IMG/VR virus record: IMGVR_UViG_3300017987_000001
Span: 124,001 to 188,000 of that record
Length of the DNA stretch: 64,000 nucleotides
Direction: 5' to 3' (one strand)
This document shows, one piece after another, positions 3,628-59,781 of this stretch; positions within the stretch are counted from its first letter, which is position 1, and each line of letters starts with the position of its first letter. The position numbers and the translations under genes are program-made. The notes below the pieces were generated by a model. The model was not told the DNA's origin. It ran no database searches and worked only from the letters and a program-made list of their open reading frames with translations.

Positions 3628-5490
3628 CTAATACTTCGCCCCGGCCATCCCGTCGGGCTTAATCGGAGGCTTCCCGAACTCGGTCGTCTGCGCCAGCGAC
3701 GGAATGAACGATTCGCTGTGCTGCGCAGCTCCGAGGCCACGGTGCACCGATTGTAGCAGATTCTTTTTCAGATGGAAACCACCAAGTCGTACCATCCAAT
3801 CCTCGTTGTACCCCAGCGTCTCCATGGCGCGCACCATCTCCGGGGCGAACATCGGCTCGTCGGAGTGAGCCTTCACGGTCTTGAGTCCGCGCTTGTTGAT
3901 CTCAGCGGCAATGCGCGGCGTGATCTTCGTACCGATGGAGTACTGGAAGATCGGCTCCTCCAAGTACATGCCCACGGCACTCTTCGGTCGCATGGGCTTC
4001 GTACCCGTGCGCGGCTGATACTCGCGTGTGAGCGTGCTGAACTCTACCACATCATCGGGCAGCATGTCGGTGGTTCCGTCGGAGTCGACAATCCGTGCAT
4101 GGTTGATCAATCCGCGCGTCAGCAGCTCGATGTTCCGACGGTTCGCATCGATCTTGGTGGCCTTCAACGTGTTCCGGAAGTTGTTCATGAAGTGCCAGCG
4201 TCCGGCACCGATGCCCTTGTACTTCACAACCTCGGACGGGTTCGGCAAGCCTTCGCTCAATACGTCACCGGCCTCGATCTTGTCGCCGGGCACGACGGTC
4301 GGGTCGAACTCGGGCGCGACGTAGTGCTTCACGCCGCGCACGATAATGAAGTGACCGCCCTGCGGCGCTTTCTCGATGCCCTCGACAGTACCGTCGGTCT
4401 GCGCGATAGCCGCGCCGCCCATGAACGTACGTGGCACCTGAACGAGCTGGTTGATCGCATCGAAGCCGCCAGCGGTAGGACCAGCACCAACGACACCGCC
4501 GGTATGCTTCGAGGAGATAGCTGACTGCGTAATCGGCTCCGAGATAGCCTGTGCCGCTGCAACACCGACGTTGTCACCGATCTCGGGGAGCTTGCCCTTC
4601 TCGCGCACACCGACGCACCGGGCACACACACCATCGCGTGCCTGACACGTGAGCGGGCTGCGCACGATGATCTCTTTACCGTCACGCCCTATGCGCTTGG
4701 CTGCCTTCGTATCGATGATCGTATTCGCTTTGAAGCCCCCAGCGGGAGCTGCAAGGATCGAGCCAACGTTATCCGGGTCATCAGCGTCGACCGGGATGCC
4801 GTTGACCGTACCGCAATCATCCTCAGTGACGAGCAGCCGGTGAGATGCAAGCGCGAGCTGCTTGCCGAGAAAGCCGCCCTTCGGCGTGGCGAACTTGAGG
4901 TCGACCATGCCCTTTCGTGCCCCGTACGAGCCAGCCCAGTACTCGACTGGGTCCAGCCCCTCAGCGTACGAGTTGAGCAACGGGATCGGAACCGGGTTGC
5001 CTTTGTGGTCGGCCACGAGCAGGTCGCCGATGTTCGTCTGACTGAACTGAATCGGGTTGCCGCGTGCGCCGGAGTTGACCTGCATGGCGAGCGCGTTACG
5101 AAGGTCGAGCTGCTCTTGGAAGTTCAGTTTCCTAAGATCGTCGGCGCGCTTGCCGAGAAGTTTTATGACTCGCTCATTCTTTTGCTCATCGGTGAGCGGG
5201 GAGTTCAGAATCCTATTAACGCCACTACGTAGCTCGTCGCGAATCTTCTGTGCCTTCGGCCCTACAGTTAGAGAATCTAGGCTGATGGACGCCTCGCGGC
5301 CGTAGGTGGTAACCACCTCGGCCCCGAGGTCCATCATCTTCTTCGCGATCTCGTTGTACTGCTCCGGGTAGCGCTTCGCCACTTCGCGCAGGACCGTCTT
5401 GATCGTCTTCTTATTGATGGGACGATCGTAGTCCCGCATATCCGGCGGCAGGATGTCGTTGATCAGCAGTTGACCGACTGTAGTCTTCAC
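3628..5490 (-). CDS. rpoC: Multisubunit RNA polymerase beta' subunit, C-terminal half
   Basis: TTVGQ start, NSGARGN, bridge helix YGARKGMVD, EDDCGT, Zn site RSPLTC...CARC, trigger loop AAQAISEPITQ...KHTGG. Confidence 0.95.
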   Translation of the reverse strand: MKTTVGQLLINDILPPDMRDYDRPINKKTIKTVLREVAKRYPEQYNEIAKKMMDLGAEVVTTYGREASISLDSLTVGPKAQKIRDELRSGVNRILNSPLTDEQKNERVIKLLGKRADDLRKLNFQEQLDLRNALAMQVNSGARGNPIQFSQTNIGDLLVADHKGNPVPIPLLNSYAEGLDPVEYWAGSYGARKGMVDLKFATPKGGFLGKQLALASHRLLVTEDDCGTVNGIPVDADDPDNVGSILAAPAGGFKANTIIDTKAAKRIGRDGKEIIVRSPLTCQARDGVCARCVGVREKGKLPEIGDNVGVAAAQAISEPITQSAISSKHTGGVVGAGPTAGGFDAINQLVQVPRTFMGGAAIAQTDGTVEGIEKAPQGGHFIIVRGVKHYVAPEFDPTVVPGDKIEAGDVLSEGLPNPSEVVKYKGIGAGRWHFMNNFRNTLKATKIDANRRNIELLTRGLINHARIVDSDGTTDMLPDDVVEFSTLTREYQPRTGTKPMRPKSAVGMYLEEPIFQYSIGTKITPRIAAEINKRGLKTVKAHSDEPMFAPEMVRAMETLGYNEDWMVRLGGFHLKKNLLQSVHRGLGAAQHSESFIPSLAQTTEFGKPPIKPDGMAGAKY

Positions 5491-33902: not shown

Positions 33903-36677
33903 TCAGCCAGTCTGTGCGCCGGTCATCTGTTGTAGTGCTTGGAACCCTCCCTCAAGCTTCGCCTGATCCCTTGTCTCGTCCATCTTCTGGATAACGAGCG
34001 CGTGAAGCGTCTGATCGGACTTCTTGAGGTCCGTGAGCTGCGACTTGCGGATCTCGTACGGCATACCAAGCATCTGCATCGCAATCTGCTCAGCCTGCGA
34101 TTGCATATCGTCGGGTGTCGTTCCACCCGCCGGAGAGGGCTGTCCAGCAGGAGCAGCGCCTGCGGGAGCGCCACCAGCAGGAGCGGGCTGACCGGGCATC
34201 TGCGGCTGGTCTGCGGCAGCGAAGATCTGCTCGAACTCCTGCTGCTTCGCCTGATCCTCCTGAAACTTCTTGCTCTCGTCGGCGAACTGCTTCTCTTCCT
34301 CGAACATCCGCCGTATTTCCTCGCGCCAGTCGATTCCATACGGTGCGAAGGCAGTCTGCTTCGAGATCTGCTGCGAGGCGGCGAGCTGAAGCTGGATCTG
34401 CTTCTTCTCGATGTCCTCGGCGAGCGTCGTCGGCTGGAGGCGTCCGCTGATCTTCTCCCAGTTCATCAGGTCGGTAATCGCCTCGAAGAACCAGTTGACC
34501 CACCCGTTCATGGCGGAGACGAAATGCGTCCACGTGCGCTCAAACAGACGCAGCGCCATCGGAGCTGCCTGCACCTGCAGCGTGCCACGGTACATCTCAG
34601 CCGGAACGCCCATAGCATTGAGGAACTCGTCCATGCCTGCATTGATGAGGTCAACGGGAGCGAGATCCTGCCCCTCGCCACCAAGAGCGCGGTAGTCGAT
34701 GGGGAACGGGAGTGCATTCCACTGAGTCGGATCCTTGCGATGCTTGCGAATCATGCCCATCACGCGGCCCATGAACGAACCAGCATTGACGTGATACAGC
34801 GGGTCGACCTCGCCAGTGCCCGAGCCCTTGCCCGGCGTGATGATGCGGAATGGAATGATGTAGTCGAGACCGATGGCCTCGTTGTAGCGCTTGAGCACCT
34901 GCACGTACCACGCCTGCTTGAAGTTGGCGAGGATGCGCGGAATGCCCCATCCGGCATTACGCAAACCGGCGACGCACTCCTCTTTGAAGTGGTAGATGAT
35001 GCCCTTGTTGAACTGGAACCACTTGTCGGTGCGCAAGCACTCGACTATTTCCCACGGCGTCGACTCAAGGTAGAACGGGTTGCCCTTGCGGACCTCTCGC
35101 TTGATGTCCGAAGGCGGGATCCAATAGTACGCAGTCTCGTGAGAAATTGGGTGGTGCTGGAGACGGACCTCGTGGGGCGACCATCGAATGATTCGTGGCT
35201 TATCCTCTTCCACGGAACGGCGATCGACACGTTCGAATACTCCCGTCCACCCACACTGTGGACACGTCGCGTTGAACTGCCAGTTCTCAAAGGAGTATTC
35301 CATCCGACCGAGCGTGCGTTCGTGGAAACACTTACGACAGCGAAGATATCGGCGGAATGGAATGTGTACGGAAGTGAATGAATTACCGTAGCACTGCTTC
35401 GTCAGAATGCCGTTATCGATAACGAACGTATGCGTCTCCATCTCGACACAGCAGAATACCTCGTCAACAATACCTGTTCCGCGTACTTCCTTGACTCCGA
35501 TATACTGACCATAGTTCGTGGGCTTGTAGTTCTCCTCGAACTTGGCTCTATGCGCTGGGATCAGGAAGTCTTGCGGCAACATCGACTGCTTAAGCAACGT
35601 GACGTAATAAATGTCACTGTCGTATACGTCGACGTGTCCGTCATCACGAACAAACTCCGCCGTACGCCGCTGACTTCGGACAGGACCAGCGGACATACCG
35701 ATACGAGGAAGCTGTCGAACAATTGCCTCCAACGTAGCGGAGGATGCCTGCGTCAGCATCGCACAACCGTGCGTGTCCACAGTACCATCAGCAGACAGGA
35801 AGCCGCATACGAAGCCGTACCAATACTCCGCACTCATGTCATTCGACGGGAGCGCCTTGTAGTGCGGCGGCAGACCAAACATCTCGACTTTTCCAGAGTC
35901 CGGCGTGTAGTCGTCTACATCCCAGTACGCCAGCATGACCGCGTCCTTCTCCCCGAAGAACGTAGCCTTTGCCTGCTTGCCCTTGTTGTACAGTGAGCCG
36001 TCACCAAACGTGAAGCCGTGGCGAACGCCTTCCTTGAAGTCATCACCCCGCTCGGGGCGAGGAGCTACGACTCTGGGGATCCTGTATCCCTTCCGCAGTT
36101 CAGCTGTAGAAACTTCAACCTCTTTGTCAGAGCAGTTCTTGGCGATCCACCGATGCTCGGGCGTAGCCAGCACGGTGCGGCCGTCGCTAAACTCAACTTC
36201 GAGAAGTTCTTGATGACCAAAGGACTTGAACTCTGCGGGGCGATACACGCCATCTTTCGATAGCACGTCAACAGTCTTACCCACAAGCTCGCGAAGCTTG
36301 AAGACGCCACCGCGCGTGACCGCTTCAGTGTCGCCGTGGAAACACATGTAATCGTCGCCAATAGTAGCGAGCACGTCGAGGATCTTGATCTGCTTATTTA
36401 GGAAGTCTTCGTACTTCTCCTTCTCGTCATCCGATGCATCCTGCAGTTCGATCTTCGTCAGGAAGTAGCGAACGACACGCTGCGCAGCCATGCGAAACGT
36501 GCCGTTGGTTACCCACAGATACTCACACCAGCGCATGACGTCGTAGAGCGAGCGCGGCATCTGTGTGGATGCGTAGTCAAAGAACGGGTCGGGGAATGCT
36601 TGAGAATACCGGTTCGCCGTACTGTTGGCTGAACCGACACCGGTCGTTGGGAACATCGGGAAGACAGCTTCGGCCAT
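33903..36677 (-). CDS. Portal-like protein with a LAGLIDADG intein
   Basis: Spliced junction reads DDYM-CYGNSF (portal-type GN[AS]F). Position heads the structural module. Acidic/Gln-rich C-terminus. Confidence 0.7.
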   Translation of the reverse strand: MAEAVFPMFPTTGVGSANSTANRYSQAFPDPFFDYASTQMPRSLYDVMRWCEYLWVTNGTFRMAAQRVVRYFLTKIELQDASDDEKEKYEDFLNKQIKILDVLATIGDDYMCFHGDTEAVTRGGVFKLRELVGKTVDVLSKDGVYRPAEFKSFGHQELLEVEFSDGRTVLATPEHRWIAKNCSDKEVEVSTAELRKGYRIPRVVAPRPERGDDFKEGVRHGFTFGDGSLYNKGKQAKATFFGEKDAVMLAYWDVDDYTPDSGKVEMFGLPPHYKALPSNDMSAEYWYGFVCGFLSADGTVDTHGCAMLTQASSATLEAIVRQLPRIGMSAGPVRSQRRTAEFVRDDGHVDVYDSDIYYVTLLKQSMLPQDFLIPAHRAKFEENYKPTNYGQYIGVKEVRGTGIVDEVFCCVEMETHTFVIDNGILTKQCYGNSFTSVHIPFRRYLRCRKCFHERTLGRMEYSFENWQFNATCPQCGWTGVFERVDRRSVEEDKPRIIRWSPHEVRLQHHPISHETAYYWIPPSDIKREVRKGNPFYLESTPWEIVECLRTDKWFQFNKGIIYHFKEECVAGLRNAGWGIPRILANFKQAWYVQVLKRYNEAIGLDYIIPFRIITPGKGSGTGEVDPLYHVNAGSFMGRVMGMIRKHRKDPTQWNALPFPIDYRALGGEGQDLAPVDLINAGMDEFLNAMGVPAEMYRGTLQVQAAPMALRLFERTWTHFVSAMNGWVNWFFEAITDLMNWEKISGRLQPTTLAEDIEKKQIQLQLAASQQISKQTAFAPYGIDWREEIRRMFEEEKQFADESKKFQEDQAKQQEFEQIFAAADQPQMPGQPAPAGGAPAGAAPAGQPSPAGGTTPDDMQSQAEQIAMQMLGMPYEIRKSQLTDLKKSDQTLHALVIQKMDETRDQAKLEGGFQALQQMTGAQTG
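35394..36344 (-). mobile_element. Intein (317 aa, C112-Q428) with homing endonuclease
   Basis: N-terminal block CFHGDT; block B ATPEHRW; LAGLIDADG-like GFTFGDG and GFLSADG; ends HTFVIDNGILTKQ before Cys+1. Confidence 0.92.
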
Positions 36678-49135: not shown

Positions 49136-49210
49136 TGGAACGTCCGGCGGGGGTCGAACCCGCATCTTGCGCCTTTAGAGAGCGCCGCACTCCCATTGTG
49201 CTACGGACGT
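49136..49210 (-). tRNA. tRNA with CUA anticodon (amber suppressor), CCA encoded
   Basis: Manual cloverleaf: ACGTCCG/CGGACGT acceptor, GCAC/GTGC D arm, GCGCT-CTCTAAA-GGCGC anticodon arm, GCGGG-TTCGACC-CCCGC T arm, U73, CCA; 75 nt. Confidence 0.93.
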
Positions 49211-54760: not shown

Positions 54761-55198
54761 CTACTCACGTTGCGAGCGCGGGACGAGCGAGAACTCCGTC
54801 GCTACGAGATCGAACCCCGCAATGAAGTCCTCCACGACGATGTACTTGCGTGGGGTTCCGTTGCTGGAATTCGTCGGGTCGGGTATCGCATCTCCGCGCA
54901 TGAGCTGCTCGTACAGCTTCAGCGGATCGTGCCCGAGCGCCTTGGCGAGATTGATGAACGACTTCGCGCGCATTGCATCCTTGCGCGAGTAGTTCTCGAT
55001 CGTCGACCGGCCGACTCCCGCCTTCTTCGCGAACGCGCCCATCGTCATGCCCTTCTTCGCATTGTGCTGCTTGATGAGCGTAAGAAGTGCGGGCATCAGC
55101 TCGCCCATGTACAGATCCACGCCCCAAGGCTGTCGTCCGTGCAGTACCTCTGCCAGCACGTGTGCCTCGTGAGCGTACGTCTTGTCCTTCGTCGCCAT
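54761..55198 (-). CDS. XRE-family HTH DNA-binding protein
   Basis: Start MATKDK; GMTMGAFAKKAGVGRSTIENY...LAKALG. Confidence 0.8.
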   Translation of the reverse strand: MATKDKTYAHEAHVLAEVLHGRQPWGVDLYMGELMPALLTLIKQHNAKKGMTMGAFAKKAGVGRSTIENYSRKDAMRAKSFINLAKALGHDPLKLYEQLMRGDAIPDPTNSSNGTPRKYIVVEDFIAGFDLVATEFSLVPRSQRE

Positions 55199-55223
55199 AC
55201 GTCCTCCTCGTTCTGTTGAGCTG

Positions 55224-55706
55224 CTATGCGACCTTGTACTTCGCGAACGCCTTGGTGATCGCTGCATCGAGATCTTCCAATGCGAGGATCATTCGGCGGT
55301 GCTTCAGAAGCTCGTCCTTCGTAGCATCCGTCTTCAACTGCTTCGAGTTGCGCTTGCTGTAATCGCGGTTACCCATGCCGTTACGCAGCGAGGACTTGGC
55401 GCGACGCAGGCGCTTCTGGATATCGCGACTCACTTCATTGAGCGTCGGCGTCGTCGTGTAGCCGTGCTTCGTGTGCACGACCACGCCGAGAGAGCGACGG
55501 ATATCCGTCAGCACCTTGCCCAGCGGCCTGTCGACACTATCACGCGCGAGCGCAGCGATGAGCGCCGCCTTCTCGTGATACTGTGCCGTGGCCATGTGGT
55601 TTTCGAGCTTCTGGTGCGGCTTGTCCGGGAGTCGGAACGTGCGAGCACGCCCTACGTACGTGATTGCTTCCTTCTTCCGCTTCGGCGCTGTTTTCGTCTT
55701 CACCAT
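55224..55706 (-). CDS. Hypothetical basic protein (160 aa)
   Basis: ORF track; RBS AGGAG. Confidence 0.65.
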   Translation of the reverse strand: MVKTKTAPKRKKEAITYVGRARTFRLPDKPHQKLENHMATAQYHEKAALIAALARDSVDRPLGKVLTDIRRSLGVVVHTKHGYTTTPTLNEVSRDIQKRLRRAKSSLRNGMGNRDYSKRNSKQLKTDATKDELLKHRRMILALEDLDAAITKAFAKYKVA

Positions 55707-55715
55707 TTCTTTCTC

Positions 55716-56450
55716 CTAACGACGGGTGTTCACTTTCGACCCCGCCGGTTTTTCACTCAGCCCGCGTCGCTTGGCTTTGTTCACTGCCACCCCGTAGTTG
55801 AAGGCCGTGAACGGCAGCCCCTGCTGACGGACCGCCTCTCCGAGGAGCGTGTCGCCACCATTGTGACTCAGCCGCACGTCGGGCCAGTCGATCTGCTTCA
55901 TGACATCCGTGCGGAGCCACCAGTAGGCTCCCTGTGCGAATGTGATTCCGGGGGACTTGATACCGGGCGTTCGGGTCGCACACATCTCCGTGGGCTTCCC
56001 TTTGAACCACGTCGCCTGCTTGATGAAGTCCCACTGCCCCGGAAGGTGGTGCACGTACCACGACTGCCCAACATACGAGCAGTTCGGGACGCGCGCGATA
56101 TGTCCTGTTGTCTTCTGCCACCAATCGCTCTTGTCGATATACGAGTCGTCATCGAACCAGAGGATCCATGGGGTTTGCGGCTTCCACGTCTCCATCTCGT
56201 GGAACATCAGCCGCATGGCCTTGTACTTCGGCTTGTTCTCTTCGCTGAAGAGGTACTCGAAGTCCGCGCTGCCGTGCTTCTCCTTGAAGCCCATCACAAG
56301 CTTCTGCGACGGCTTGCCAATGGTATTGCACCACAGCCTGATCACCGCCTGATCGAGCGGCGTGTAAGCGAACAGCGAGCGAAGGAGGCGCGTGTGCAGG
56401 GCAAGATCGTTGCCGTACAGGAGCGCGTAAATTGTCACGAACTCATTCAT
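55716..56450 (-). CDS. GT2-like glycosyltransferase (stand-alone)
   Basis: WILWFDDDSYI, FAQGAYW, HNGGD..LG. Confidence 0.7.
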   Translation of the reverse strand: MNEFVTIYALLYGNDLALHTRLLRSLFAYTPLDQAVIRLWCNTIGKPSQKLVMGFKEKHGSADFEYLFSEENKPKYKAMRLMFHEMETWKPQTPWILWFDDDSYIDKSDWWQKTTGHIARVPNCSYVGQSWYVHHLPGQWDFIKQATWFKGKPTEMCATRTPGIKSPGITFAQGAYWWLRTDVMKQIDWPDVRLSHNGGDTLLGEAVRQQGLPFTAFNYGVAVNKAKRRGLSEKPAGSKVNTRR

Positions 56451-56974
56451 TGGCGTCTCAGATCCTTAGACATCATCCTACTGAAGAGCCGCTGCTTCAC
56501 GTCGAAGATCGCATTCTTGATGCTGTCGATCTTGCGATAGCCCTTCTTCGTGACCGCATCCAGCTCTTCGATGGCTTTGGATATCACTCCCGTGAAGTGC
56601 GATGCCGTCTCGACTACCTGAGGACCGTTCGCTACCTGCTTGAGCGCAACAGCGAGATGGTCCACGAGCGCGGCATTGAACTCCGCAGGCGGCAGCGACT
56701 CGATGCCGGATATCATATCCCAATACTTGAGCGGAATGCGCATATCATGCTGATCATCGTCGTCCGGGTCAACGCGCTTGCGCACGTCACCGTGCCGGAA
56801 GGCAACAGCAACTTCGTTGACGACGATGACCTCGAAGTCACAGCCGGGATACGCAATCACGACGCTAGGCAGTGAGTTCTTCCCGCCCTTCACGACCACT
56901 GACGAGAAATTACTCCGTCGAGATTTCTTCAAAAGTCTGGGATCCAAGCCAGACCACGACTTACGTTTGGCCAT
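56447..56974 (-). CDS. Hypothetical protein (175 aa)
   Basis: ORF track; RBS GAGGGGG. Confidence 0.65.
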   Translation of the reverse strand: MAKRKSWSGLDPRLLKKSRRSNFSSVVVKGGKNSLPSVVIAYPGCDFEVIVVNEVAVAFRHGDVRKRVDPDDDDQHDMRIPLKYWDMISGIESLPPAEFNAALVDHLAVALKQVANGPQVVETASHFTGVISKAIEELDAVTKKGYRKIDSIKNAIFDVKQRLFSRMMSKDLRRQ

Positions 56975-56989
56975 TTCACCCCCTCATCG

Positions 56990-57017
56990 TTGACTTACAT
57001 CACCCAAGGTGTATCAT
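56990..57017 (+). promoter_or_regulatory. Sigma70-type promoter TTGACT-N16-TATCAT on the plus strand
   Basis: Read directly; opposes the coding direction. Confidence 0.6.
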
Positions 57018-57022
57018 TGCTC

Positions 57023-57155
57023 TGCTTGGCGGAGAGTTCGGGAGGCAGATCACAACTTCAACCCCCCAGCAAGTGATTTCCGATACAGACAGTGGGGCAC
57101 TGCTCTGTCCACCAAGCAACAACGGCGACCCAGCCCGGGTCGCCGTTGCTTTTTT
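57023..57155 (+). ncRNA. Putative structured small RNA (~130 nt)
   Basis: Lies between a plus-strand promoter and terminator; closing stem TGCTTGG/CCAAGCA plus internal hairpins. Confidence 0.5.
57121..57155 (+). terminator. Intrinsic terminator on the plus strand
   Basis: AACGGCGACCC/GGGTCGCCGTT 11 bp stem, then GC-TTTTTT. Confidence 0.75.
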
Positions 57156-57171
57156 GGACGCGTCCAACAAT
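57150..57171. promoter_or_regulatory. 22 bp palindrome copy 6 (TTTTTTGGACGCGTCCAACAAT)
   Basis: Perfect 14 bp core; intergenic. Confidence 0.75.
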
Positions 57172-57495
57172 CTACTTGGAGTCGGATGCAGAGCTGGACT
57201 CCTCCTCGTCAGGCTTCGCCTCACCGGTCGCACGCTTCTTCAGCCCGTCTTCGAGCGCGGTGCCGCCGATGAACATCGCCGACACAGTAGCGACAACCAT
57301 GCCGAAGATCTCCGCCATGTTGTTGACGATCTCGGGATCCTCTCCCTCCGGGAGCCGCCCCAACAACATGAAGTAGCTCGCCACGACCGCCAGTATGGCG
57401 AAGACGCCCTTCCGACTCGCGAAGATGTTACCGAGAGACTTGAGTCCTCCGTACTTCGCAAGCTGCTCCACGGCTTTCGCGACATGGTTCTTCAT
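57172..57495 (-). CDS. Two-TM membrane protein (holin-like topology)
   Basis: Two hydrophobic helices, charged C-terminus; function is inference. Confidence 0.6.
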   Translation of the reverse strand: MKNHVAKAVEQLAKYGGLKSLGNIFASRKGVFAILAVVASYFMLLGRLPEGEDPEIVNNMAEIFGMVVATVSAMFIGGTALEDGLKKRATGEAKPDEEESSSASDSK

Positions 57496-58718: not shown

Positions 58719-59206
58719 GGTTGCCATTTCTGTCTCAGCCCAGCGGCAAATGCGTCGAACGGCAAAACCGTGAGCCGCGAGCCATCGTGGCCGTTCCGAA
58801 TGATCGCGTTGACGCCCGGGATGACCGAGACGTCGGCATCGTGGATGATCCAGTTGCTCTTGGCGACCAGCGGGAAGACCACTCCTACTTTCAGTCCTTC
58901 TTCGTGCGTCGCGCGGGCTTCGATGAACGCCTGCGCGATCGGATGCTTCATGAAGGATTTCAGCAACAGGTCTCCGATGACCTGCCCCTTCAGTTTGGTA
59001 ACGGTGACATATACGGGTGGGTTGTACGCGTCGTTGAACCACTCGAACCCGAACTCATCACCGGCCTCGTGCGCCAGCTCTCGGGCATCCTCATCATCCA
59101 ACAGGATGGAGAGGAGCCGGTTGAGCATGCGAATGTCATAACGCTGCTCCGATTGCTGCCGCTTGTCGGCTTCGAACTGGTCGAAGCCGGGAAAGAGATT
59201 GTTCAT
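58715..59206 (-). CDS. Hypothetical protein (163 aa)
   Basis: ORF track; ATGA overlap. Confidence 0.65.
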   Translation of the reverse strand: MNNLFPGFDQFEADKRQQSEQRYDIRMLNRLLSILLDDEDARELAHEAGDEFGFEWFNDAYNPPVYVTVTKLKGQVIGDLLLKSFMKHPIAQAFIEARATHEEGLKVGVVFPLVAKSNWIIHDADVSVIPGVNAIIRNGHDGSRLTVLPFDAFAAGLRQKWQP

Positions 59207-59781
59207 ACCGTTCCCTCATCACACAGCGAGTCGGTGAGCTTCCTGATATAGTTGCGCACGCGACGGAGCCACTCGCAGTCACGGAAGTTGACGAAGAACA
59301 TGAAGACGGGGATGTTGAGCACCTGCGCCAGACCACGCACGTACGTACCATTTGGCGCTGTGTCGTTGCGCTCCCAGTACGAGATAGTGGTCTGTGCGAC
59401 TGGGATACCCTTGTCAGTCATGAGCTTCGCGAGGCGCCACTGTGGGACGCTCCGCTCTTCTCTGAACCTCCGTAGATTCTCTCCGAAGTGGTAGTCGTAG
59501 TGCGTGGGTGGTTGGGGGAGCGCGGGCAGATCTAAGATCTGCCCGGGCGGGACAGCTATGTACGCTTCATCCGATAGCTCATTGTTCTCGGTATCGAACT
59601 TCAGGTCTTCGAAGTGGTGCCAGTAGAGCTTGCGACGCCCATTCCACTGTACGGCGACCTTGTTGAAGTTCGACACACGAGTCGTTTGCTTGCGTACCGC
59701 GATACCCTTACGATCCTTCTTCGCGACCAACAGCTTACCGTTGGCCGCATACAGATCCGTACGCGCCCACACAACCCCCAT
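59203..59781 (-). CDS. Protein with C-terminal XRE-family HTH
   Basis: FGENLRRFREERSVPQWRLAK...QTTISYWERN..P. Confidence 0.85.
   Translation of the reverse strand: MGVVWARTDLYAANGKLLVAKKDRKGIAVRKQTTRVSNFNKVAVQWNGRRKLYWHHFEDLKFDTENNELSDEAYIAVPPGQILDLPALPQPPTHYDYHFGENLRRFREERSVPQWRLAKLMTDKGIPVAQTTISYWERNDTAPNGTYVRGLAQVLNIPVFMFFVNFRDCEWLRRVRNYIRKLTDSLCDEGTV

What the first reader, a model, noticed from the sequence alone, without database searches (positions are those of the whole stretch)
57023..57155. Counter-oriented structured small RNA with its own promoter and terminator
Seen: the only plus-strand unit I found, with TTGACT-N16-TATCAT, about 130 nt, and an 11 bp hairpin plus T6. It can fold with a closing stem (TGCTTGG 57023 / CCAAGCA 57112), a long hairpin (TCGGGA..GATCAC / GTGATT.TCCGA) with a C-rich loop (AACTTCAACCCCCCAGCAA), and CAGTG/CACTG. 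A 22 bp palindrome overlaps its terminator. Inference: the C-rich loop could pair with G-rich RBSs, including GAGGGGGTGAA of the adjacent gene at 56974. It is also antisense to any read-through minus-strand mRNA.
Basis: partly seen in the sequence, partly recalled or inferred. Interest (0 to 1): 0.63.

Follow-up and report, generated by a model that had tools for sequence, protein, structure and literature searches.

The report
Conserved counter-strand phage small RNA
A structured RNA gene of about 130 bases, with its own host-type promoter and terminator, sits backwards between two genes of an uncultured 208-kb phage and recurs with compensating base changes in related phages; it is probably a base-pairing regulator, but no RNA data exist to show it is transcribed.

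Summary
Taken alone, the promoter match is no better than chance: 8 such hits occur in the genome and 8.05 in shuffles. The comparative evidence is strong. Three full relatives and one cut copy were reached through the flanking proteins. In the four full copies the -35 (TTGAC) and -10 (TAnnnT) hexamers keep a spacing of exactly 16 while the spacer sequence diverges. The closing stem and a GGG-loop hairpin covary: 11 pairs change on both sides, against 3.4 in shuffles. A C-rich apical loop is nearly invariant. G.U/A.C asymmetry favours the window's + strand, with 6 G.U and 2 mismatches against 1 G.U and 7 mismatches on the other strand. No Rfam family matches and no ORF is conserved. The element co-occurs with the divergent 175-aa gene. 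More distant relatives have an unrelated gene there and no gap.

The loop is instead complementary over 19-20 bp to a second conserved intergenic site at the head of the phage's tRNA array. This could equally be a shared sense-strand motif.

Verdict: a likely new phage small-RNA family whose expression is untested.

The parts
56990..56995 (+). -35 hexamer TTGACT of the small-RNA promoter. It lies 4 nt from the Shine-Dalgarno of the divergent 175-aa gene.
   Evidence: TTGAC is invariant in all 4 full copies.
57012..57017 (+). -10 hexamer TATCAT. The spacer to the -35 is exactly 16.
   Evidence: The hexamer is TATCAT in 3 copies and TAGACT in 1. The spacer is 16 in all 4, with only about 6/16 identity in sequence.
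57024..57155 (+). Predicted small RNA of about 132 nt. The start is inferred as the G seven bases after the -10. The end is inferred as the T6 tract.
   Evidence: Inferred from the promoter and terminator geometry. Model R1 scores it at 128 bits, and it is the only full-length copy in the genome. No ORF is conserved.
57023..57033 (+). P1 closing stem, 5' strand. It pairs with 57108-57118.
   Evidence: Of 10 pairs, 6 change on both sides among 4 sequences.
57038..57083 (+). Long irregular hairpin that carries the conserved C-rich apical loop.
Evidence: The same architecture is the minimum-energy fold in L113, L136 and L143. Register differs between copies, so column-wise covariation was not scored.
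57060..57075 (+). Conserved C-rich loop motif (consensus UCCCCC-RR-CAAGU). It is complementary to site B, outside the window at G000:C1 about 2285-2307.
   Evidence: Searches show conservation. Searches show the complementarity.
57086..57107 (+). Hairpin of 9 bp with one bulge and a GGG loop.
   Evidence: All 5 copies have different stem sequences and all pair.
57108..57118 (+). P1 closing stem, 3' strand.
57120..57155 (+). Terminator hairpin (12-bp stem) followed by C and T6. An A-tract on the other side makes it usable in both directions.
   Evidence: The stem is nearly invariant, with 1 compensatory pair in L113. L179 has a different stem sequence but the same hairpin. A good U-tract on this strand occurs in 3 of 5 copies.
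57154..57167 (.). A copy of the genome-wide 14-bp palindrome (22-bp consensus). It overlaps the last two T's of the tract. It is probably a separate regulatory site, not part of the RNA.
   Evidence: There are 19 copies with 2 or fewer mismatches in 208 kb, against about 0.7 expected. L143 has the same motif at the same place.
56447..56974 (-). Divergent 175-aa gene of unknown function. It always co-occurs with the element. Its SD is at 56979-56985.
57172..57495 (-). Convergent upstream gene encoding a 107-aa protein with two hydrophobic segments and an acidic tail. Its 3' end shares the hairpin with the small RNA.

Best explanation
The region holds a non-coding RNA gene of about 132 nt on the window's + strand, opposite to all surrounding genes. 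It lies in an uncultured 208-kb phage that encodes its own multisubunit RNA polymerase. A host sigma-70-type promoter (TTGACT-16-TATCAT) drives the RNA, and a strong hairpin with a T6 tract ends it. The RNA folds into a closing stem that encloses a long hairpin with an exposed C-rich loop and a second hairpin with a GGG loop.

It most likely acts by base pairing. In cis it is perfectly complementary to any minus-strand transcript that crosses the gap, that is, the leader of the divergent 175-aa gene or the 3' end of the convergent 107-aa membrane-protein mRNA. In trans, its conserved loop can form a 19-20-bp duplex with a conserved intergenic site at the head of the phage's tRNA array.

Shown: the sequence features, their conservation, helix covariation and strand asymmetry, the absence of coding potential, and the complementarity.
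Inferred: transcription, the RNA's ends, and any regulatory effect.
For: Promoter footprint: across 4 full copies (window, L113, L136=L135, L143), -35 TTGAC is invariant, the -10 is TATCAT in 3 and TAGACT in 1, and the spacer is exactly 16 with divergent sequence.

Covariation: 92.4% of cells pair. 11 pairs change on both sides, against 3.4+-1.4 in shuffles (0/500) and 0-2 in slid controls. RNAalifold finds 13 compensatory pairs.

Strand: in curated helices of 5 copies the + strand gives 139 WC, 6 G.U and 2 mismatches. The - strand gives 139 WC, 1 G.U and 7 mismatches.

Loop: the motif is nearly invariant and is predicted unpaired in 3 relatives, with P 0.70-0.91.

Terminator: it is one of about 4 canonical hairpins in 208 kb.

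Non-coding: there is no conserved ORF, and the indels are not multiples of 3.

Cassette behaviour: the element is present with the 175-aa gene in every relative that has that gene. It is absent where an unrelated 147-aa gene overlaps the upstream gene.

Trans site: site B is the best non-self duplex in the whole sense transcriptome, at -35.9 kcal/mol against a mean of -12.3 and sd of 3.8. The L136-type phage gives -47 with the site B from the same samples.
Against: - No expression data exist. All runs that hold the DNA are DNA assemblies.
- The promoter match is at chance level genome-wide.
- Both strands fold about equally well.
- On the minus strand the G-run can pair with a conserved CUUCC through G.U pairs, which favours a sense-strand reading for that segment.
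- Two of 5 copies lack a U-tract after the hairpin on this strand.
- In the window's own copy the C-run is predicted to be mostly paired.
- The site B match alone has a BLAST E-value of about 0.5. Because site B is G/U-rich, wobble-compatible variation carries no discriminating power.
- There are only 4 full sequences, and the asymmetry tally (6 against 1) gives p of about 0.06, with some hand-chosen terminal pairs.
Confidence: 0.6

Rival explanations
1. The functional strand is the minus (gene-sense) strand. On this reading the region is a structured 5' leader or intergenic cis-element of the 175-aa gene. The 16-nt G-rich motif, present twice in the genome on the sense strand, would be a site read by a protein or by RNA polymerase. 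That resembles the two nut or put sites of lambdoid phages. The plus-strand promoter match would then be incidental.
For: - The motif occurs exactly twice, both times on the sense strand and both times in intergenic DNA.
- The genome-wide palindrome usually sits just upstream of genes and tRNAs, and here it immediately precedes the hairpin and the structure.
- The sense-strand helix GGGGG/CUUCC keeps its G.U pairs in all 4 copies.
- The sense strand folds slightly better in the window.
- The phage has its own RNA polymerase with unknown promoters.
Against: - The conserved TTGAC-16-TAnnnT with a divergent spacer has no explanation on the sense strand.
- In P1 and the GGG-loop hairpin the sense strand has 7 mismatches where the plus strand has G.U pairs.
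- No sense-strand sigma-70 promoter or terminator delimits such an RNA.
- About 40 poorly conserved bases separate the structure from the SD.
Confidence: 0.2
2. The small RNA is the antitoxin-like partner of a neighbouring protein, in a type I toxin-antitoxin-like or lysis-timing layout. Either it overlaps the 3' end of the convergent 107-aa two-transmembrane protein mRNA through the shared hairpin, or it blocks the leader of the divergent 175-aa gene.
For: - The upstream protein has two hydrophobic segments and a charged tail.
- That gene and the small RNA converge on one bidirectional hairpin.
- The small RNA and the 175-aa gene are divergent and always co-occur.
Against: - The 107-aa family also occurs without the element.
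- 107 aa and 175 aa are far larger than type I toxins.
- No family hit suggests a toxin or a holin.
- Pure cis-antisense action does not explain an invariant loop sequence.
Confidence: 0.1
3. There is no RNA function. On this reading the region is only a bidirectional terminator plus DNA sites for regulators, and the extra helices are by-products.
For: - The hairpin has A- and T-tracts on both sides.
- A protein-site-like palindrome abuts it.
- The fold z-score of the core alone is modest.
Against: - Compensatory changes in two helices outside the terminator indicate selection on pairing.
- A 14-16-nt loop is invariant across phages whose flanking proteins are only 56-70% identical.
Confidence: 0.08

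Closest known systems
Lambda OOP RNA and similar phage cis-antisense RNAs such as P22 Sar (from general knowledge, not tested here)
   Same: A short transcript runs against an otherwise unidirectional phage operon. It has its own sigma-70-type promoter and an intrinsic terminator, and it is complementary to the opposing mRNA.
   Different: OOP overlaps a coding region, whereas this element is wholly intergenic. This element has a multi-helix junction with covariation and an invariant loop, which pure cis-antisense RNAs do not need. There is no sequence or Rfam relation.
C-rich-loop small RNAs: actinobacterial 6C RNA (PMC6486639, listed) and RsaE/RoxS-type RNAs
   Same: An exposed run of 5-6 C's in an apical loop can pair with G-rich mRNA segments.
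   Different: 6C has two C-rich loops and is chromosomal. This RNA has one C-rich loop, is phage-borne, and gives no Rfam hit even at E<=10. Pairing to the neighbouring G-rich RBS is not conserved.
Phage immunity RNAs that pair with short complementary sites elsewhere in the phage genome, such as P4 CI RNA and P1/P7 C4 RNA (from general knowledge)
   Same: A small phage RNA whose conserved segment matches a short sequence at a distant site in the phage's own transcripts (here site B, 19-20 bp).
   Different: Those RNAs are processed from the same-sense operon transcript. This one would be made from the opposite strand with its own promoter. A regulatory outcome is unknown.
Divergent type I toxin-antitoxin pairs such as tisB/istR-1, and convergent ones such as txpA/RatA (from general knowledge)
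   Same: A small RNA lies divergent from one gene and convergent with a membrane-protein gene. It is complementary to the leader or the 3' end of the neighbour's mRNA.
   Different: The neighbouring proteins are 175 and 107 aa, not peptides under 60 aa. There is no evidence of toxicity.
Phage morons (autonomous promoter-gene-terminator inserts)
   Same: The element carries its own promoter and terminator. It is present in one subclade and absent from more distant relatives at the same position.
   Different: The product is an RNA. It travels together with a protein gene that replaces an unrelated gene, so this is a cassette swap and not a simple insertion.

Membership tests
Any Rfam 15 family | Covariance-model score at or near the family's gathering threshold | tested here: not met
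   The only gathering-level hit in the window is a tRNA elsewhere. At E<=10 the best hits on the region are STnc250 at 19.8 bits (gathering 42) and CcsR1 at 18 bits (gathering 65), and both cover only the terminator. No family recurs in the relatives.
6C RNA (RF01066) | Two hairpins, each with a loop of about 6 or more C's | tested here: not met
   There is only one C-rich loop (57062-57067). The second hairpin loop is GGG. There is no Rfam hit.
Independent bacterial/phage small-RNA gene | Own promoter conserved in relatives | tested here: met
   TTGAC-16-TAnnnT is kept in 4 of 4 full copies with a divergent spacer. This is sequence evidence only.
Independent bacterial/phage small-RNA gene | Intrinsic terminator on the same strand | tested here: inconclusive
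   The hairpin is present in 5 of 5 copies. The U-tract is good in the window, L143 and L179, and poor in L113 and L136.
Independent bacterial/phage small-RNA gene | A discrete transcript is detected | not testable with these tools
   No RNA run holds the sequence. Only DNA contigs could be laid on it.
Structured non-coding RNA | Helices supported by compensatory changes, with no conserved ORF | tested here: met
   11 pairs change on both sides, against 3.4 in shuffles. All six frames have stops or lack starts in the relatives.
Lambda OOP-type cis-antisense RNA | Overlaps the coding region of the opposing gene | tested here: not met
   The RNA (57024-57155) lies between the stop at 57172 and the start at 56974.
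Type I toxin-antitoxin | Small hydrophobic toxin peptide (usually under 60 aa) next to the antisense RNA | tested here: not met
   The neighbours are 107 aa (two hydrophobic segments) and 175 aa. No smaller conserved ORF exists.
nut/put-like sense RNA sites | The same RNA motif in two operon leaders on the transcribed strand | tested here: inconclusive
   There are two sense-strand copies, both in intergenic DNA. No antiterminator, promoter or termination data are available.

The most novel reading that the evidence does not exclude
A jumbo phage that carries its own RNA polymerase also keeps a small RNA made by the host polymerase. The invariant C-rich loop of this RNA pairs over 19-20 bp with the conserved leader in front of the phage's own tRNA array. 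This would couple host-polymerase activity to processing or expression of the phage tRNAs, making it a phage small RNA whose trans target is the phage's own tRNA operon.
Probability: 0.2. Interest if true: 0.7.

Novelty: new member of a known kind. Interest (0 to 1): 0.5.

Why it matters
Regulatory RNAs of large uncultured phages are almost unknown. Here comparative sequence alone defines a candidate family, with a promoter, covarying helices, an invariant loop and a concrete, testable target site. If it is transcribed, it would show that a phage with its own RNA polymerase still uses a host-type promoter for a regulator. It would also provide a model (R1) for finding further members. If it is not transcribed, the twice-occurring sense motif and the conserved structure still mark an unrecognised cis-regulatory element.

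Tried and rejected
- DNA searches of the phage collection, near and distant, gave no match.
- Scans of viral contigs gave only chance hits. I tried the palindrome, the -10/leader 16-mer, the terminator stem and the loop plus the GGG hairpin. L144 shares the stem only, behind an unrelated gene.
- The genome-contig pattern scan gave 33 hits, and none fits the model.
- The metagenome scan with the 175-aa protein family returned only the window's own contig.
- Viral-contig scans with both protein families found nothing.
- The JGI sample 3300042731 holds further relatives of both loci, but its DNA could not be fetched.
- Read laying showed only DNA contigs with no variation in the element.
- There is no second full-length copy in the genome.
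- tRNA-like, retron, MITE and small-ORF readings were considered and dropped. ARAGORN finds nothing there, there is no reverse transcriptase nearby, the stem covaries where terminal inverted repeats would be conserved, and there is no ORF.
- The 175-aa protein has no family and a poor Atlas model.
- The first genome-wide duplex scan timed out and was redone more coarsely.
I repeated it by reading the stored protein file.
- Complex prediction, structure prediction and the representative-protein search were not used.

Full report
**Context.** The window is bases 124001-188000 of a 207,857-bp virus record from a sediment metagenome. GC content is about 60% and the GC skew is uniformly negative. 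Every ORF with a family hit lies on the minus strand. The phage encodes a piece of a multisubunit RNA polymerase beta' (3628-5490). It is about 30% identical to proteins of Vibrio phage D181 and Salmonella phage Arash. No close relative exists in the cultured-phage collection.

**Observation.**
- The promoter TTGACT-16-TATCAT is at 56990-57017.
- The closing stem pairs 57023-57033 with 57108-57118.
- A long hairpin at 57038-57083 has its C-run in the loop.
- A hairpin at 57086-57107 has a GGG loop.
- A 12-bp G+C-rich hairpin at 57120-57148 is followed by C and T6.
- A 14-bp perfect palindrome lies at 57154-57167.

How unusual these features are varies.
- The promoter match is unremarkable: 8 hits of equal quality occur in the genome and 8.05 in shuffles.
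- The terminator is unusual. Only about four canonical hairpin-plus-T-tail sites exist in 208 kb, and this is the strongest.
- Folding energy is significant for the whole unit, with z of about -6 on either strand, but modest for the core.
- No Rfam family matches.

**Relatives.** DNA searches failed, so I went through the flanking proteins.
- The 175-aa protein has two homologues and the 107-aa protein has eight.
- Their contigs gave three more full copies of the intergenic element: L113, L136 (identical to L135 here) and L143. They also gave one 5'-cut, more divergent copy, L179.
- Two further JGI contigs have the same gene order and gap, but their DNA could not be fetched.
- In more distant relatives (L137, L138, L140, L141, L178) the 107-aa homologue overlaps a 147-aa gene. 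That gene is unrelated to the 175-aa protein, and there is no gap and no model hit.
- The element therefore travels with the divergent 175-aa gene as a cassette.

**Promoter footprint.** On the strand antisense to the genes, all four full copies keep -35 TTGAC(A/T). The -10 is TATCAT in three copies and TAGACT in one. The spacer is exactly 16 bases, but its sequence is only about a third identical. This is the classic signature of a functional sigma-70-type promoter. It has no evident explanation on the sense strand. The genome also has a few similar TTGAC-N16/17-TAnnnT sites on the sense strand, one of them in front of a tRNA. Host-type promoters therefore appear to be in use in this phage.

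**Structure.**
- RNAalifold finds the closing stem, the GGG-loop hairpin and the terminator on either strand.
- On a model-fitted alignment, 92.4% of cells pair. 11 of 33 pairs change on both sides, against 3.4+-1.4 in shuffles (0 of 500) and 0-2 when partners are slid. That alignment leans towards the structure by construction, and there are only four sequences.
- L136 has a completely different closing-stem sequence that still pairs.
- L179 has a different GGG-position hairpin and a different terminator stem that still pair.
- Three relatives add a small UCC/GGA hairpin that the window lacks.
- No frame is open in all copies, and the indels are not multiples of three.

**Which strand.** Thermodynamics do not decide. 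In the hand-curated helices of five copies, the plus strand has 6 G.U pairs and 2 mismatches. The minus strand has 1 G.U pair and 7 mismatches. This favours the plus strand at roughly p = 0.06, and two of the pairs are terminal. Against this, on the minus strand the G-run can pair with a conserved CUUCC through G.U pairs. U-tracts after the hairpin are good on the plus strand in 3 of 5 copies and on the minus strand in 1 of 5. Taken together with the promoter, I put about 0.7 on a real plus-strand RNA.

**The loop and its targets.** The motif at 57060-57075 is the most conserved part of the element. It is predicted unpaired in the three relatives but largely paired in the window's own copy.

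The complement of the loop occurs once more in the genome, at G000:C1 about 2289-2304. I call this site B.
- It lies on the sense strand, 3 nt after the stop of a 110-aa gene and about 135 nt before tRNA-Ser(GCU), at the head of a tRNA array.
- It is invariant in the relatives L181-L184, within a conserved, multi-hairpin intergenic region.
- The small RNA would form 20 bp with it in this phage (4 G.U pairs). In the L136-type phage, whose site B comes from the same two samples, it would form 19 bp.
- It is the best non-self duplex in the whole sense transcriptome.

Two caveats apply. The bare match has a BLAST E-value of about 0.5, so its weight comes from falling exactly on the conserved loop and in conserved intergenic DNA. 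And because site B is G/U-rich, the wobble-compatible variation seen has no power to separate RNA pairing from a shared sense-strand motif.

**Mechanism.** The best-supported reading is a host-polymerase-made small RNA that acts by base pairing. It is fully complementary to any minus-strand RNA that crosses the gap, whether the leader of the 175-aa gene or the 3' end of the 107-aa membrane-protein mRNA. Its promoter sits 4 nt from the 175-aa gene's Shine-Dalgarno, so transcriptional interference is also possible. Pure cis action would not constrain the loop sequence. The invariant loop therefore argues for an additional trans partner, and site B is the only candidate found. All of this is inference.

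**Comparison with known systems and novelty.** The element works most like lambda OOP-type counter-transcripts and like C-rich-loop small RNAs such as 6C. It fails the defining features of each: it has no coding overlap, it has one C-loop and not two, and it has no Rfam hit. It is a new family of a known kind.

**Limits.** The data comprise four full sequences plus one partial copy. No RNA data exist, the host is unknown, and relatives' genomes are incomplete, so the covariation test between the loop and site B could not be run.

Noticed in passing
window 57154-57167, plus 18 other sites genome-wide (for example window 9586, 19803, 32818, 37306, 42575, 61098): A 14-bp palindrome (22-bp consensus) occurs 19 times with 2 or fewer mismatches, against about 0.7 expected by chance. 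In intergenic DNA it usually lies about 5 nt upstream of a Shine-Dalgarno or just before a tRNA. One copy lies between a sigma-70-like promoter and a tRNA. It looks like an operator, stoperator or processing site. L143's phage shares it, while L113 and L136 have different palindromes at the same spot.
   Followed up: partly
G000:C1 about 2160-2310 (locus L180), outside the window: A conserved intergenic region of about 150 nt lies between a 110-aa gene and tRNA-Ser(GCU). It has a 10-bp closing stem enclosing three hairpins, and it begins with the G-rich 16-mer complementary to the small-RNA loop. There is no Rfam hit. It is 86% identical across three phages.
   Followed up: partly
window 49136-49210 (-): A tRNA with anticodon CUA, which reads the amber stop. 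ARAGORN labels it tRNA-Pyl and Rfam scores it as a tRNA at 63 bits. Stop-codon usage in the genome was not examined.
   Followed up: no
window 3628-5490 (-): A phage-encoded fragment of multisubunit RNA polymerase beta' (Rpb1 domains 4 and 5). It is about 30% identical to proteins of Vibrio phage D181 and Salmonella phage Arash, so the phage probably transcribes part of its genome itself.
   Followed up: partly
G000:C1 1-2155 and about 195-206 kb: A large tRNA array runs across the record's ends, with six tRNAs in the first 2.2 kb. The record's 'direct terminal repeat' is only 123 bp, so it may be an assembly overlap of a circular or permuted genome.
   Followed up: no
window 33903-36677 (-): A 924-aa ORF has a weak, sub-threshold match to an intein splicing domain (23 bits against a cut-off of 35.8).
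   Followed up: no
window 54761-55267 (-) and 59203-59781 (-): Two helix-turn-helix, CI-repressor-like proteins flank the region. They are candidates for binding the palindrome.
   Followed up: no
window 61098 region: A second place where the palindrome is followed on the sense strand by a long G+C-rich hairpin and then a Shine-Dalgarno. This mirrors the motif-then-hairpin order at the finding.
   Followed up: no
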